Source of the DNA: Neoconidiobolus thromboides FSU 785
Taxonomy: Eukaryota > Fungi > Entomophthoromycota
NCBI GenBank assembly: GCA_025603075.1
Contig: MU626308.1
Coordinates: 1-64,000, forward strand
Direction: 5' to 3'
DNA length: 64,000 nucleotides
This document shows, piece by piece, positions 48,010-54,073 of this stretch. Within the stretch, counting starts at the first letter, position 1, and each line of letters starts with the position of its first letter. The translations under genes and the position numbers were made by a program. Below the pieces are notes generated by a model that was not told where the DNA came from, did no database searches, and saw nothing but the letters and a program-made list of their open reading frames with translations.

Positions 48010-49536
48010 ATGACTCGTTTAGTTTCTTTATTTAAGGTAACATCTCCTTTACAATTATTGTACTTAATTTATCTTTATAATTAGAATTGCGCTACCCGCT
48101 CTGCTATCCCATCTCGTTTTTATTCTTCTGCCTCTGCTTCAGTGAGTTTATATTTAACTTATATTTATAATAACTAATCATACATTAGGGCTTAAAAGAT
48201 AGACTCGCTGAAATTATCCCTGAAAAACAAGCTGAAGTAAAGCATGTTAAAGCTGAGTATGGATCCAAATCCTTAGGTGAAGTTACTGTAGATATGGTAA
48301 GTTAAGTTATAATTTATTTAAATAAATATTAATAAAATATAGGCCTATGGTGGTATGCGTGGTATCAAAGGTATGATCTGGGAAGGTTCAGTATTAGATG
48401 CTGAAGAAGGTATTAGATTCCGTGGTTATACCATCCCAGAATGCCAACAAAAACTTCCAGCTGCTGAAGGTGGTTCTGAACCATTACCAGAATCTCTTTT
48501 CTGGTTATTATTAACCGGTGAAGTACCAACTGCTTCTCAAACTCGTGCTCTTTCTAAAGAATGGGCTGCTCGTTCTGAAATCCCAAAATTTGTTGAAGAA
48601 CTTATTGATTCTTTACCAAAAACTTTACACCCAATGTCTCAATTCTCCCTTGCTATCACTGCTCTCCAACATGATAGTAAATTTGCTAAAGCTTATCAAC
48701 AAGGTATCCATAAATCTAAATATTGGGATTTTGCTTATGAAGATTCTATGGATCTTATTGCTAAACTTCCAAATGTTGCTGGTCGTATTTACCAAAATGT
48801 TTATAAGAATGGCAAATTAGCTGAAATTGATCTTGATGCTGATTATGGTCACAATTTAGCTAAACTTTTAGGTTTCTCTCAAAACAAAGATTTTGTTGAA
48901 CTTATGCGTTTATACTTAACCATTCATAGTGATCATGAAGGTGGTAATGTATCTGCTCATACTACTCATTTAGTTGGTTCCGCTCTTTCTGATCCTTACC
49001 TTTCTTTCGCTTCTGGTCTTAATGGTTTAGCTGGTCCACTTCATGGTCTCGCTAACCAAGAAGTTCTCCGTTGGACTCAAAAGATGCAAGCTCAAGTTGG
49101 TAATGATGCCAGTGATGAAACTATTAAGGATTATATTTGGTCTACCCTTAAATCTGGTCAAGTTGTACCAGGTTATGGTCATGCCGTTTTACGTAAAACT
49201 GATCCAAGATACACTTGTCAACGTGAATTTGCTCTTAAACATTTACCAGAAGACCCAATGTTCCAATTAGTTAGCAAACTTTATAACTTAGTACCAGGTA
49301 TTTTAACTGAACATGGTAAAACTAAGAACCCATGGCCAAATGTTGATGCCCATTCCGGTGTCTTATTACAACATTATGGACTTGTTGAACAAGATTATTA
49401 TACCGTATTATTTGGTGTATCACGTGCTCTTGGTGTATTATCTCAACTTATTTGGGATCGTGCTTTAGGTTTACCACTTGAACGTCCAAAATCTCTTTCT
49501 ACTGAAGCCTTACTTAAATTGGTTAAAAAGAACTAA
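48010..49536 (+). CDS. CIT1: Mitochondrial citrate synthase, 4 exons
   Basis: [61 protein letters not shown]. Confidence 0.97.
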
Positions 49537-49822
49537 TCTATCTAAATGAAAATCTAATTATAAGATAAATAAATCACTCTTTTGTATAAAATAAATGTAC
49601 AAAAAAAATTAGACTTTTAAAACAAAAATTAAAAATCAAAATATTTAATTAACTAATAAAAATATAATGTATTAAGTATTAAAGATTCATTCAAAAAAAT
49701 AATTATAATAGAATAATAGAATATAAGTTTGTAAATTTATAAAATATAAATCAAATTTAAATTTAAAAAAATCAAATAAAATTTATTATTTATTTTATAT
49801 AAATTTCAATATAATCTTAAAA

Positions 49823-51512
49823 TTAAAAAAATTGATTATAAATGGGTATAATAATATAATAAAATAAAACTATAATAATAACCCAAGTTAAAAAGAGCAT
49901 CGGAATTTGAAAAATTTCAAAAAAATGTCTTAAAGAAACATTAATAATTGAAGGTTGATGTTGTACATCAGCATGAAAACAACCATGTTTATAAAAATGA
50001 TCTAAATATTCATCTTTTTCTTTCCATCTAAGTCGTAGCCAGTTACCAAATTCATCTTCATCAATAGGTATTTCATTTAATTTAAATCGACGTATATGTA
50101 TATGAATTTGTTGAGGATTTAATCCAATTACATACATTAAAGCTAATGTATAAATATATTGTGGAGATTCACCTGCTTTTACTCCAGGTATACCAATAGT
50201 TATATCATAAATATATTCTACACTTTCTTTTAAAGATTCAATACATTTAAATAATCCAAGACTTCTAGGTAATAATACATGTTTATAAGTTTCCTAAATA
50301 TTAAATAATATATTAGTTAAATATAATGAAATATATAATATATAATATATAATATATAACATAATATATATAATATATAACATAATATATATAATATATA
50401 ACATAATATATATAATATATAACATAATATATATAATATATAACATAATATATATAATATAAAATATATAATATAAAATATATAATATTTAATATTTACA
50501 TAACCATTTTTTTCAGCAAATATTTTAGATTTATATCTTGTATCTCCAGTTAATGTAGTACCTTCTGGAAAGATTAATAGCCACATTGGTTTAATAGATT
50601 GATTCAATTTCTTCATATGTGCCATAAAACTAAATTCATCTTTCGTCCAATTACGTTCTAAAAATATAAAATCAAAAAACCACATACCCTATTTATAATA
50701 ATTCTTATTAATATTCTATTCTATTATTTAATTGAATTTATTATAATTTACCCTAAAATAATAATATATATTAAATATTATATTTTATTTATATTTCATT
50801 TTATTTATTCTTACCATCCAAATACTGGTATCTTGGCTAAACTTTTTTTTAATATAATTTTTAAATCCCCGTGTCTTCTAGCAAAATAAGAAAAACACCT
50901 AAATAATTTAGATTATTTTCATTTAAATCAAATATTCAATTTTATACCATATATAAATCCAATCAGAATAAAGCTAAAGAAAATTAATTAATATAATATA
51001 ATATAATATAATATAATAATTTTTAAATTTAAAATAATAATTACTTGATGGTTACAAATAAGTAATAATCTCTCTGGTAAATTTAATTTCGTTTTATAAT
51101 CTTCAGGTGAATCAATTGATGCAGGATCTAAAGGGGTTTGAGAGTATAAGGATTCCTCAATAGAACTATCTTTATATAAAATAAAACTAGTAGGTGCAAA
51201 AAGTTGATGAAAAGCAACCATGGATATACCAAATAACTGTTGAGTAAAATGAATTATATTGTCAAATTTTTTTCGATCAAATAAAGCCAATGGTAAACAT
51301 ATTATTTGTAATGAATTAATAACAATAGCTGAAAATATAAACATAATTATAACAAGTCCCGTTTTAATATAAAAATGTATATTTTTTAAAATGTCTTTTT
51401 GATCAAATAATTTGCCTTCTGTTCCTGGTATTGGTAACTCATATTGTTTAGGTGTGAACTCATGAGTTAATTCATCAATTTCTGCTACTTCTTTCCCCAT
51501 CTTGGTTTCCAT
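49823..51512 (-). CDS. Lyso-phospholipid acyltransferase (Cst26/LCLAT1-like), multi-exon with a probable 1-nt exon
   Basis: CNHQ|LYSDWIYIW, LAKIPVFGW-GMWFFDFIFLERNW, LIFPEGT, HVLLPRSLG, YDITIG motifs. Confidence 0.9.
50339..50460. repeat. 21-bp AT-rich minisatellite inside an acyltransferase intron
   Basis: CATAATATATATAATATATAA repeated about 5-6 times; produces the spurious ILCYILY run in the ORF track. Confidence 0.88.
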
Positions 51513-54073
51513 TCTGATATTTTACTTTTATTATTCTAATATTTATTAATACAAAAGGTAAATTGAAATTAGTTTTATAATTAGAGTTTTATCTTTCAAC
51601 TGTAAAAGTTATTCTAAACCCTATAATTGAAATGATGTCACCAATTGAATTAAATGGTTTAAATATCTATTGATGTCATTGTTATTGCTATTAATCTATT
51701 ATTTTTAATATATAGACTATAAAATATTATATATATCTTATTATTAGTATTCTCTTAATAATAAATATATATAATTTTACAGTTAGAAAGACGTTTTTTT
51801 AACTATTAAATACATAATTTAATTATTTCTAGATTAAACAATAAGTGACTTTTATCATATTTTATCGAATTTTAAATCGTCTATATGGAATTATTTTTTT
51901 AGATATAAAAGTTAAAAATAAACACAATCTTTATTATAACAATCAACTCCGATACTTTAATAATAATCCGTCTCCATTTATAAATAACAATTGTTGTTTA
52001 TAAATAAAACTTCATAGAAAATTATATACGAGTTTCCTTAGTATAAAGTTAATATGAATACTTGTTTTATGATTATAGTTAATAAAAGTCACTAATTTGG
52101 TATTAAATATCTTAAATTTCATAATGTTAAGCAATTGTATATTTAAAAACATTAATTACCTATTTAATAGGAAGTGACTATTTTTTTTAAATTACAAGAA
52201 AAATTGAAAAATAAAACAGTATGATAATTGATTCGTATTATATAAGCCGCCAATTCTCCGTAATTATATAATATAAACTTATGAACTAATGTAATAGTGA
52301 AGATTATAAATATCTGTTTGTTAGTTTATAAAGTAAAAGATAAAATGTTCTATAACAAAACAGTTACTATTAACTTGTTTCTTATTTTTCAAAATCAGGT
52401 CGTTATTTATTACCTTTGGGAACACTATTTATATTTCTTCTGTTGTAGATGTTTCTTTACTAACAATGCCCAATTTGACTACTATAAAATAATTGAATAT
52501 TACTATAATACTATTATTGGTTAACTCATCTTACATGTATCTCGATCTCTTATTTAAATTCTTATAACCAAGTTTAATCAAATATATATTTGATAAGTAG
52601 CATTTATCTCGAATAATATATATTTTTTATAGTCATTATTTTGATATAAAATTCAAATATAACTATAATTATTAATAATATAAAATTGACTTACCAGATT
52701 ATCAATTCTATTTTAATTTTCAAGGGTCAATCTTGGTTTTGTATTAGCATTGACAGTATCTACTTTTTTTCCTTTCTTTTCATGTTATAGTCTATAAGTT
52801 TAATAAATGAATTGATAAGCAATATGCTATAAATCAATTCTTATATATGCATTTAACTGTAATAAATATAAACATAAATATAAAAATCATTATCATTATC
52901 ACCTTATTATTTTATCAAAACACTGTAATTGATTAGATTAAACTTAGAAACAAGTGAACTATTTACTTTGAAATTTGAAATCAACTAATGAGATGGGATG
53001 ACCCATGAATATTTATTCAATTACTCTGTTAGACTCATTTATAGAGATATATCTCTATTATTGATATACACTGTGTATACTGTTAACTAATTAAACGACA
53101 TCAAAATTCTTTTCAAGCGTAAATATTTTTAGATACTCTTATAGCTTGTTATTTAATCCTTTTATATGGAGTAATTAACTTGTATTTAATAAGAGTAAAC
53201 TTTTGAATAATGAGATATAATTTAATAAAAGGAATTTAAAGAGAAATATCAATAAAAAAGGTAAACTGAAAAAAACATTTTTAAAATGAGTGAGTTGTTT
53301 ATTAATAAAAATTATCAAATGTAATCGATATGGTTTTTCCCAACTATCACATGCACATAGTACATCCGAAAGGATATAGAATATATCGATCTGTAAAAAG
53401 AATAATATTAGAATAAAAGGAATTCAGTAAGAAATCAAAATAATACCACTTTTCATTACGAATCTTCGAAAAAACTCAAGTAAATCCAAGTTAAATAAAA
53501 TCTATCTTTCAAACGAACTCAACAATTAAACCTTTAACATTGATTCAATAGAAAATAAATTTTCTAATCCTCAAAGTTAAAAATTACTCTTAATACATTG
53601 TTCCATGACATAATTATAAGGCATCACCATTAATATATCTTCAGTTTGAAACTTAATTAAAAGTAAAAACTTCTAGATTAAATGATCTTTAAAATTATGT
53701 CGATAAAAAAAAACTTTGATGAAAAACTGGAGGCTTTTATATGTTTCTGAAGAATGAAGTTTATTGAAATTGTGGGTTGAATATATTAAAAATAAGTTTT
53801 CTATAATTCTTAAATGATTGGTTTATTTAATAACATTAAAAAAATTTTACCACCAATTCTGAAAATTAAAATTTTAAATTCTTAAGATTTATTGTTTTGG
53901 GGATTTGTAGAAAAAATAAACTTAAATTTTTGTTAAATTCGATTAGATTAAAATACTCTAGTACTTTCTATAAGTTTCTATATAAGTTTGATTTAAAAAA
54001 CTAATAATAAACACTAAGTAAGCTTAATGTTAAATGTTTCTTTTTCAACTAAGTTGAGTTTTAAAGTTAATAT

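What the first reader, a model, noticed from the sequence alone, without database searches (positions are those of the whole stretch)
50689..50814. Apparent one-nucleotide exon in the acyltransferase gene
On the - strand the coding sequence stops at ...CCA GTA TTT GGA TG|GTAAG (donor 50814) and resumes at AAATAG|GGT ATG TGG TTT TTT GAT (50688). Removing one 126-nt intron frameshifts the conserved IPVFGW-GMWFFDFIFLERNW motif. Midway, the sequence reads TTTTAG|G|GTAAAT: an acceptor and a donor enclosing a single G (50752), which splits the region into two normal-sized introns of 62 and 63 nt. Including that G gives TGG GGT ATG TGG (W-G-M-W) exactly. Single-nucleotide internal exons have been reported only rarely and need a special splicing order.
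Basis: partly seen in the sequence, partly recalled or inferred. Interest (0 to 1): 0.8.

Follow-up and report, generated by a model that had tools for sequence, protein, structure and literature searches.

The report
Ancient one-base exon in acyltransferase gene
A single G lying between two ordinary short introns is very probably a real exon of a lipid acyltransferase gene in the fungus Neoconidiobolus thromboides. The same one-base exon sits at the same codon in five distantly related fungi, and many public gene models get this site wrong.

Summary
On the minus strand the coding sequence stops at ...GGATG|GTAAGA (donor at 50814) and resumes at AAATAG|GGTATG (50688). Removing all 126 nt breaks the frame. 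Keeping G50752, which is flanked by TTTTAG| and |GTAAAT, gives an intact 412-aa PlsC-type acyltransferase reading ...IPVFGWGMWFFDFIFLERNW.

The decisive evidence is comparative. Five other genomes were checked: Diversispora eburnea, Gigaspora rosea, Mortierella alpina, Jimgerdemannia flammicorona and Rhizopus microsporus. Each has the same one-base shortfall at the same codon. Each also has exactly one AG|G|GT inside an otherwise unalignable intervening sequence. Three basidiomycete-type loci keep only the downstream (phase-0) intron. Coemansia and Pyronema have no intron there.

Spliced cDNA contigs of relatives read GW-GM without interruption. The NCBI models for N. thromboides, G. rosea and R. 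microsporus already translate through the site. At least 20 other public models skip exons, read into the intron or stop there.

Nuclear one-base exons are published only for Arabidopsis APC11 and Fusarium CYP621A. This scan earlier noted one in the PDK gene of the same genome. Verdict: a new and unusually ancient member of a known, very rare kind.

The parts
49823..51512 (-). Whole coding region of the acyltransferase gene: six exons, 412 aa, stop included
   Evidence: Gene model built. Pfam Acyltransferase PF01553 and Acyltransf_C PF16076 score above cut-off on the NCBI model P0001. P0001 maps to the same 1399-nt span.
51045..51512 (-). Exon 1 (468 nt), ending ...ICNHQ
   Evidence: The phase-0 donor after NHQ is shared with seven other fungal loci: Diversispora, Gigaspora, Jimgerdemannia, Rhizopus, Cantharellus and Pyronema directly, and Mortierella as implied by its public model.
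50974..51044 (-). Intron 1, 71 nt, GTAATT..TTTAG
50948..50973 (-). Exon 2 (26 nt), LYSDWIYI + TG
   Evidence: Collinear with relatives' cDNA proteins P0151 and P0002.
50899..50947 (-). Intron 2, 49 nt, GTATAA..TTTAG
50815..50898 (-). Exon 3 (84 nt), ...KSLAKIPVFG + TG (first two bases of the Trp codon)
50753..50814 (-). Upstream intron of the pair (phase 2), 62 nt, GTAAGA..TTTTAG, with a TTAAT branch-like motif 18 nt from its 3' end
50752..50752 (-). One-base exon: G, third base of the Trp codon TG-G (C on the + strand)
   Evidence: Restores the frame. An AG|G|GT sits at the same codon in five other genomes.
50689..50751 (-). Downstream intron of the pair (phase 0), 63 nt, GTAAAT..AATAG, with a TTAAT branch-like motif 19 nt from its 3' end
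   Evidence: An intron at this same position is the only one kept in Cantharellus and two basidiomycete-like contigs.
50500..50688 (-). Exon 5 (189 nt), GMWFFDFIFLERNW...EKNGY
50294..50499 (-). Intron 5, 206 nt, GTAAAT..TTTAG, swollen by an AT-rich tandem repeat
49823..50293 (-). Exon 6 (468 nt plus stop), Acyltransf_C domain and C-terminal hydrophobic tail

Best explanation
G50752 (minus strand) is a constitutive one-nucleotide exon of a PlsC/AGPAT-type lysophospholipid acyltransferase gene of Neoconidiobolus thromboides FSU 785. It is flanked by two ordinary U2-type GT-AG introns of 62 and 63 nt, one in phase 2 and one in phase 0 of the neighbouring codons TGG-GGT. The G supplies the third base of the Trp codon in the conserved IPVFGW-GMWFFDFIFL block.

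Shown: the layout is inherited. It is present at the same codon in Entomophthoromycota, Glomeromycota, Mortierellomycota and Mucoromycota (Endogonales and Mucorales).

Inferred: it dates at least to their common ancestor. Basidiomycetes have lost the upstream intron and kept the downstream one. Ascomycetes and Coemansia have lost both.

Inferred mechanism: these fungi recognise short introns across the intron, so exon length is not limiting. However, the 3' splice site AG|G of the first intron and the 5' splice site G|GTAAAT of the second overlap physically. The two introns must therefore be removed one after the other, as at a recursive-splicing ratchet point that leaves one base behind. If the upstream intron goes first, the product is ...ATGG|GTAAAT, an intact donor. 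If the downstream intron goes first, the product is TTTTAG|GGGTATG, an intact acceptor. Upstream-first, during transcription, is my guess.
For: (1) Including the G gives an uninterrupted 412-aa ORF. Omitting it gives a stop 10 codons later.

(2) D. eburnea L004, G. rosea L006, M. alpina L007, J. flammicorona L005 and R. microsporus L008 all end the upstream exon on two bases of a codon (TG, or AC in Rhizopus). All start the downstream exon on GGN or GCC. Each has exactly one AGGGT in the intervening 94-449 nt, followed by GTAAGA, GTGAGT, GTATGT, GTAAGT or GTATGT. Sub-intron sizes are 208/140, 98/276, 338/110, 125/87 and 48/45 nt. The product of the per-species shuffle probabilities is about 7e-10. 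In all six genomes +G restores the motif and -G gives an early stop.

(3) Spacing across the site is invariant in 13 aligned fungal proteins: P121, G124, G126 and M127 are invariant columns.

(4) Intron-less cDNA-type contigs read the junction contiguously: L002 and L003 (61% and 57% identical to this protein; GGT TGG GGC ATG) and the Paraglomus-like L013 (GGA TGG GGA ATG).

(5) The NCBI models for N. thromboides (KAI9295889.1 = P0001), G. rosea (RIB20980.1) and R. microsporus (PHZ15791.1) translate GWGM or GTGM. This is impossible without the extra base.

(6) RNA-type runs X1-X5 hold 0.53-0.64 of the 31-mers of the gene region. The expectation for fully spliced mRNA is 0.61-0.67, so the gene is expressed and its introns are absent from those contigs.

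(7) The same AG|G|GT signature defines the published Fusarium one-base exon (PMC12940212).
Against: No read or cDNA of N. thromboides itself was examined across the junction.

The mature sequence GGATG-G-GGTATG would look the same if one 125-nt intron with GT..TA or TA..AG ends were removed. The three correct public models may rest on transcript mapping, but their exon coordinates could not be seen. The splicing order is pure inference. Branch-point motifs are weak evidence in such AT-rich sequence.
Confidence: 0.9

Rival explanations
1. One 125-nt intron with non-canonical ends (GT..TA or TA..AG) is removed in a single step. The internal TTTTAG|G|GTAAAT is irrelevant.
For: It would give the same mRNA, because the bases next to both outer junctions are G. 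mRNA or protein evidence alone cannot exclude it.
Against: All six genomes keep exactly one AG|G|GT with a good donor hexamer inside otherwise unalignable intron sequence of very different length and composition. The sub-introns have normal sizes for each genome: 45-63 nt in Rhizopus and Neoconidiobolus. Every other intron of this gene is GT-AG. In basidiomycetes the downstream intron exists alone, with canonical ends, at exactly this phase-0 position.
Confidence: 0.03
2. Assembly error: the genome really has one more G at a junction (GGGG for GGG), so there is a single ordinary 126-nt intron.
For: The missing base lies next to short G runs. Base-level DNA reads could not be inspected.
Against: Five other assemblies, from different projects and technologies, show the same one-base deficit at the same codon together with the internal AG|G|GT. 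Chance occurrence of AGGGT in this 126-nt stretch is 0.35%.
Confidence: 0.02
3. The gene is a frameshifted pseudogene, or is rescued by ribosomal frameshifting, and the middle motif is fortuitous.
For: Removing the 126 nt as one intron leaves a frameshift.
Against: Both halves stay open and conserved: 61% identity to a relative's cDNA protein over the full length. RNA-type runs hold the exon words. The same 'defect' would have to persist in six lineages.
Confidence: 0.02
4. The one-base exon is real but facultative. A share of transcripts skip it by joining the outer donor to the outer acceptor. This gives a frameshifted, nonsense-mediated-decay-prone RNA that tunes enzyme output.
For: The outer sites are canonical and could pair. 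Skipping gives a stop after 10 codons. In the potato invertase experiment cited by Guo and Liu, an artificial 1-nt exon was skipped in 33% of transcripts.
Against: No RNA data here. Long retention is also explained by simple inertia in intron-rich lineages.
Confidence: 0.1

Closest known systems
Fusarium CYP621A one-nucleotide exon (Nelson and Syed 2026, PMC12940212)
   Same: Nuclear fungal gene. A single G between two short GT-AG introns, with the identical AG|G|GT core. The G is needed to keep a conserved motif in frame. The combined intervening length is about twice the normal intron size. Automatic annotation misses it.
   Different: That case is confined to one genus and a P450 of unknown function, and there the G is the middle base of a Gly codon. 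Here the exon lies in a PlsC-type acyltransferase, supplies the third base of Trp (Thr in Rhizopus), and is shared by four phyla of early-diverging fungi.
Arabidopsis APC11 single-nucleotide exon A333 (Guo and Liu 2015, PMC4674806)
   Same: A constitutive one-base exon required for the frame. The authors likewise propose intron definition plus sequential ('recursive') removal of the two introns.
   Different: The base is an A in a 422-nt intervening region. It was proven by substitution and deletion constructs. Rice paralogues lack the introns. Here there is no experimental proof, but conservation is far deeper.
Recursive splice sites / ratcheting points (zero-length exons, AG|GTAAGT) of Drosophila and human long introns (PMC6110456, PMC2773006 listed; details from general knowledge)
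   Same: A 3' splice site sits directly against a 5' splice site. The two are used one after the other, and the first ligation regenerates a usable donor.
   Different: Ratchet points leave nothing in the mRNA and serve very long introns. Here one base stays in the mRNA and both introns are about 60 nt.
Stwintrons and the one-nucleotide intron shift model (Fekete et al. 2017, PMC5587772)
   Same: Fungal complex intervening sequences that need two consecutive splicing reactions. They explain orthologous introns one base apart.
   Different: In a stwintron the inner intron interrupts a splice signal of the outer intron, and everything is removed. Here the two introns abut rather than nest, both have complete signals before any splicing, and one base is retained. 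Differential loss from this layout is a second route to introns one base apart.
One-base exon in the pyruvate dehydrogenase kinase gene of the same genome
   Same: Same organism. A single G between two short introns, also reported as shared with distant fungi and mis-modelled in public annotation.
   Different: A different gene on another piece of the genome. I did not re-test it.

Membership tests
Spliceosomal one-nucleotide exon | Exactly one base lies between the AG of one canonical intron and the GT of the next | tested here: met
   TTTTAG|G|GTAAAT at 50753/50752/50751. Both introns are GT..AG, 62 and 63 nt.
Spliceosomal one-nucleotide exon | The base is needed to join the flanking exons in frame and to preserve a conserved protein motif | tested here: met
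   +G gives KSLAKIPVFGWGMWFFDFIFLE. -G gives a stop after 10 codons. Motif spacing is invariant in 13 fungal proteins.
Spliceosomal one-nucleotide exon | Orthologues keep the same candidate exon and splice signals | tested here: met
   Five further genomes in Glomeromycota, Mortierellomycota and Mucoromycota have a single AG|G|GT at the same codon.
Spliceosomal one-nucleotide exon | mRNA of the organism carries the base at the junction | tested here: inconclusive
No transcript-derived protein of this species was found. Indirect support: the NCBI model P0001 reads GWGMW, relatives' cDNA contigs are contiguous, and RNA-type runs hold an exon-sized share of the words.
Spliceosomal one-nucleotide exon | Changing or deleting the base changes the mRNA accordingly (the Arabidopsis standard of proof) | not testable with these tools
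   Needs minigene or genome-editing experiments.
Recursive splice site (zero-length exon) | 3' and 5' splice sites are directly juxtaposed (AG|GT) with no base retained | tested here: not met
   One G separates AG and GT and is required in the mRNA. It works like a ratchet point but is not one.
Stwintron (spliceosomal twin intron) | An internal intron interrupts the donor, branch or acceptor element of an external intron, which exists only after the first excision | tested here: not met
   Both introns have complete GT and AG ends in the primary sequence and abut rather than nest. The definition is from PMC5587772.
PlsC/AGPAT-type lysophospholipid acyltransferase with Acyltransf_C tail | Pfam PF01553 and PF16076 above gathering score, with the NHQxxxD (HX4D) catalytic motif present | tested here: met
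   P0001 scores 73.9 bits on PF01553 (cut-off 23) and 60.5 bits on PF16076 (cut-off 26.5). NHQLYSD is present, and N86, H87, Q88 and D92 are invariant columns. The substrate was not tested.

The most novel reading that the evidence does not exclude
The pair of introns one base apart was already present in the common ancestor of Entomophthoromycota, Mucoromycota in the broad sense, and Dikarya, which would make this the oldest one-base exon known. It has been kept not merely by inertia but because it acts as a splicing checkpoint: joining the outer sites skips the G and yields a frameshifted, decay-prone transcript, so the level of this membrane-lipid acyltransferase is tuned by splicing order and kinetics.
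Probability: 0.1. Interest if true: 0.8.

Novelty: new member of a known kind. Interest (0 to 1): 0.68.

Why it matters
In the library searched here, nuclear one-base exons are documented for only two genes, Arabidopsis APC11 and Fusarium CYP621A. This one lies in a housekeeping-type lipid enzyme and is shared by fungi that separated several hundred million years ago (dating from general knowledge). So the spliceosome has handled a one-base exon faithfully over very long times.

It offers a natural series for testing splicing order and steric limits: six genomes, with intron sizes from 45 to 338 nt and GC from 9 to 47%.

Basidiomycetes keep only one of the two introns. This shows how differential loss from such a pair could create orthologous introns one base apart, without invoking intron sliding.

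There is also a practical consequence. At least 20 public gene models mis-handle this site: Glomeromycota, Mortierellomycota and Apophysomyces models plus Mucor flavus, and 9 of the 11 named entries in the Rhizopus microsporus cluster. They lose the catalytic acyltransferase domain or split the gene. Annotation pipelines for these fungi need an explicit AG|N|GT rule.

Tried and rejected
(1) Read laying. So there is no read-level RNA or DNA check.

(2) Transcript-derived proteins of N. thromboides. Searches with P0001 (294 aa) and with its 113-aa junction piece found none.

(3) Metagenome scan with a 13-protein alignment. It gave 40 loci, almost all Dikarya without an intron at the site. The useful ones were the Paraglomus-like cDNA L013 and two basidiomycete-like loci.

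(4) A crude script to find other one-base exons in the window, requiring at least 45 open codons on both sides. It was too strict: it recovered only a spurious variant around G50752 and was dropped.

(5) Branch-point motif search (yTnAy). Motifs are present in most sub-introns but not discriminating in AT-rich sequence.

(6) Solved structures: none related by sequence.

(7) Stwintron and zero-length recursive-site readings were considered and rejected on anatomy (see the membership test).

(8) The Logan member P0296 of the Rhizopus cluster looked like possible cDNA, but it starts inside the downstream intron and may be genomic. It could not be fetched because the look-ups were exhausted.

Full report
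**What is in the window**

The window is AT-rich (19-32% GC). It matches contig MU626308.1 of Neoconidiobolus thromboides FSU 785, assembly GCA_025603075.1. This species belongs to Entomophthorales.

On the minus strand between 51512 and 49823 lies a gene for a PlsC-type acyltransferase. Pfam Acyltransferase and Acyltransf_C both score well above cut-off. I built the model by hand:
- Exons: 51512-51045, 50973-50948, 50898-50815, 50752 alone, 50688-50500, and 50293-49823.
- Introns: 71, 49, 62, 63 and 206 nt, all GT..AG.

Exon 3 ends ...GTA TTT GGA TG. The next long exon starts GGT ATG TGG. The 126 nt between them contain TTTTAG|G|GTAAAT. With the G the CDS is 1239 nt (412 aa) and reads ...AKIPVFGWGMWFFDFIFLERNW. 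Without it a stop follows 10 codons after GW.

AGGGT is the only AG-N-GT in the 126 nt. It turns up in 0.35% of shuffles of that stretch.

**What mRNA alone cannot settle**

The first base of the upstream intron is G, and so is the first base of the downstream exon. The mature sequence GGATG-G-GGTATG would therefore look the same in two cases: a one-base exon, or a single 125-nt intron with GT..TA or TA..AG ends. A missing G in the assembly would also repair the frame. So I looked for evidence that bears on the internal AG|G|GT itself.

**Read evidence failed**

RNA-type runs X1-X5 hold 0.53-0.64 of the sampled 31-mers of 49800-51550. The expected share for a fully spliced transcript is 0.61-0.67. 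The gene is therefore expressed, and its introns are absent from those contigs.

Searches for transcript-derived proteins of this species found none. There is no read-level test of this junction in this report.

**Comparative evidence**

A search of the protein representatives with the last exon returned the NCBI model of this very gene, P0001 = KAI9295889.1. It is 294 aa, partial, and already reads IPVFGWGMWFFDF.

The same search returned two visibly broken models. P0003 (Diversispora eburnea) jumps from NHQ straight to GMQFF. P0004 (Jimgerdemannia flammicorona) has out-of-frame text between NHQ and the FIFL block. Fetching those loci and three more gave the key result:

| Species (locus) | Upstream exon end and first intron | One-base exon | Second intron and downstream exon | Intron sizes (nt) |
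|---|---|---|---|---|
| D. eburnea (L004) | GGATG\|GTAAGT..TATTAG | G (3247) | GTAAGA..AATAG\|GGAATG | 208 / 140 |
| Gigaspora rosea (L006) | GGATG\|GTACGT..TATTAG | G (1310) | GTGAGT..AATAG\|GGGATG | 98 / 276 |
| Mortierella alpina (L007) | GGCTG\|GTAACG..CCACAG | G (1669) | GTATGT..ATATAG\|GGTATG | 338 / 110 |
| J. flammicorona (L005) | GGATG\|GTCAGT..CATCAG | G (954) | GTAAGT..CACTAG\|GCCATG | 125 / 87 |
| Rhizopus microsporus (L008) | GGAAC\|GTAAGT..CAAAAG | G (1027) | GTATGT..GCTTAG\|GGAATG | 48 / 45 |

In Rhizopus the G completes a Thr codon, ACG.

In every genome there is exactly one AGGGT in the intervening stretch. The surrounding intron sequence is unalignable and ranges from 9 to 47% GC. 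The product of the per-species shuffle probabilities is about 7e-10. In all six genomes, adding the G restores the conserved motif and omitting it gives an early stop.

The phase-0 intron after NHQ is also shared, which confirms a common gene structure. Six independent assemblies with the same one-base shortfall and the same internal signal rule out an assembly error and a chance motif. A single non-canonical intron becomes very unlikely.

**Distribution**

- Coemansia spiralis has an intron-less gene (L009).
- Pyronema omphalodes has no intron at the site (L012).
- Hyaloraphidium has none there, but has a different intron 5 nt downstream (L010).
- Cantharellus anzutake (L011) and two basidiomycete-like metagenome contigs (L049, L051) have one intron only. 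It sits exactly at the phase-0 position of the downstream member of the pair: TGG|GTAAGT..CAG|GTT or GCA.

By NCBI taxonomy the one-base exon is thus present in Entomophthoromycota, Glomeromycota and Mucoromycota. It is also present in Mortierella; assigning that genus to Mortierellomycota is from general knowledge.

The most economical reading is an inference that rests on the usual fungal tree. Both introns were present in the common ancestor of these groups and of Dikarya. Basidiomycetes lost the upstream intron, and ascomycetes lost both.

**Transcript-type evidence from relatives**

Three contigs are intron-less throughout, so they are spliced transcripts, and all read the junction without interruption:
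- L002 and L003 are Logan contigs from SRR29032805 of 1468 and 1383 nt. Their complete ORFs are 61% and 57% identical to this protein. Both read GGT TGG GGC ATG.
- L013 is a 1488-nt JGI contig. Its ORF is 97.7% identical to the Paraglomus occultum model P0228 and lacks the otherwise conserved intron after NHQ. It reads TTC GGA TGG GGA ATG.

The two P. occultum public models, P0299 and P0228, stop and start exactly at this site.

**Public annotation**

The correct models are those for N. thromboides, G. rosea (RIB20980.1), R. microsporus ATCC 52813 (PHZ15791.1), one R. irregularis model (P0219) and Glomus cerebriforme.

Wrong models fall into three groups:
- NHQ|GM exon skipping: D. eburnea, Acaulospora, Entrophospora, Ambispora, Scutellospora, a second G. 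rosea model, a second R. irregularis model, Mortierella alpina, Podila, Entomortierella and Apophysomyces.
- Reading into an intron: Funneliformis (GW-VRIVYDYDY-GM), Geosiphon, Dentiscutata and Mucor flavus.
- Rhizopus microsporus/azygosporus cluster: 7 entries delete GMKFFDFIFLKR or more, and 2 stop at ...YGT.

The readings W-V-R, W-V-S-K and L-V-N-K are what one gets by splicing the first intron to the G and then running into GTAAGA, GTAAGT or GTAAAT. This indirectly extends the layout to those species.

**Mechanism (inferred)**

These fungi have short introns, which are defined across the intron, so exon length as such is not limiting. However, the AG|G of the first intron's 3' site and the G|GTAAAT of the second intron's 5' site share the same few nucleotides. 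Two spliceosomes cannot sit there together. The introns must therefore go one after the other.

On paper both orders work. Upstream first gives ATGG|GTAAAT. Downstream first gives TTTTAG|GGGTATG. Guo and Liu reached the same 'intron definition plus recursive' view for Arabidopsis. They also cite a potato 9-nt exon whose downstream intron goes first. I favour upstream-first because it is transcribed first, but nothing here tests it.

**Comparison with known cases**

Full-text searches found two nuclear spliceosomal one-base exons:
- Arabidopsis APC11 A333, proven by mutagenesis (PMC4674806).
- Fusarium CYP621A, also AG|G|GT, supported by 20 orthologues and SRA reads, and presented as the second example and the first fungal one (PMC12940212).

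The present case is not a recursive ratchet point, because a base is retained. It is not a stwintron, because the introns abut rather than nest (PMC5587772). It works like the former.

This scan had already noted a one-base exon in the PDK gene of the same genome (s1-263557). I did not re-test that note.

**Verdict**

- Observation: confirmed.
- Novelty: a new member of a known but very rare kind. It stands out for its phylogenetic depth and for the amount of public annotation it breaks.
- Main gap: direct RNA reads of N. thromboides across 50689-50814.

Noticed in passing
window 51101-51166 (- strand): The NCBI model P0001 removes a 66-nt in-frame piece of my exon 1 (KD|SSIEE...SPE|DYK becomes KDNYK) as a GT..AG intron. 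The piece has exon-like GC (0.39, against about 0.1 for real introns here). Relatives' cDNA proteins keep a segment of the same length. It is either an exitron-type alternative splice or an annotation artefact.
   Followed up: partly
window 50294-50499 (- strand): Intron 5 is 206 nt, three to four times the size of the other introns of the gene. It is swollen by an AT-rich tandem repeat of TATATATTATGT-like units.
   Followed up: no
L011 967-1052; L049 near 3055; L051 near 2012: Cantharellus anzutake and two basidiomycete-like metagenome contigs carry a single ~50-nt phase-0 intron exactly where the downstream intron of the pair sits (TGG|GT..AG|GTT or GCA). This is the state expected after precise loss of the upstream intron only.
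   Followed up: partly
Proteins P0003, P0217, P0218, P0220-P0223, P0225, P0227, P0228, P0023, P0123, P0231, P0232, P0234, P0235, P0237, P0284-P0293, P0299: Systematic mis-annotation at this site in Glomeromycota, Mortierellomycota and Mucorales: exon skipping NHQ|GM, read-through into an intron, deletion of GMKFFDFIFLKR, or genes cut in two. Many of these models therefore lack the PF01553 catalytic domain in databases.
   Followed up: partly
L002 and L003 (Logan SRR29032805): One sequencing run holds two full-length paralogous transcripts of this acyltransferase, 61% and 57% identical to the N. thromboides protein. This suggests a related entomophthoralean with a duplicated gene. The organism was not identified.
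   Followed up: no
L010 700-860: Hyaloraphidium curvatum has no intron at the W|G site but has one 5 nt downstream, inside the ATG codon of GMW (AAT|GTGGGT..TTCCAG|G). This is a nearby but distinct intron position.
   Followed up: no
window 48355-49536 (+ strand): The neighbouring convergent gene is citrate synthase, with CMC4 beyond it. The same three genes appear in the public record around P0001.
   Followed up: no
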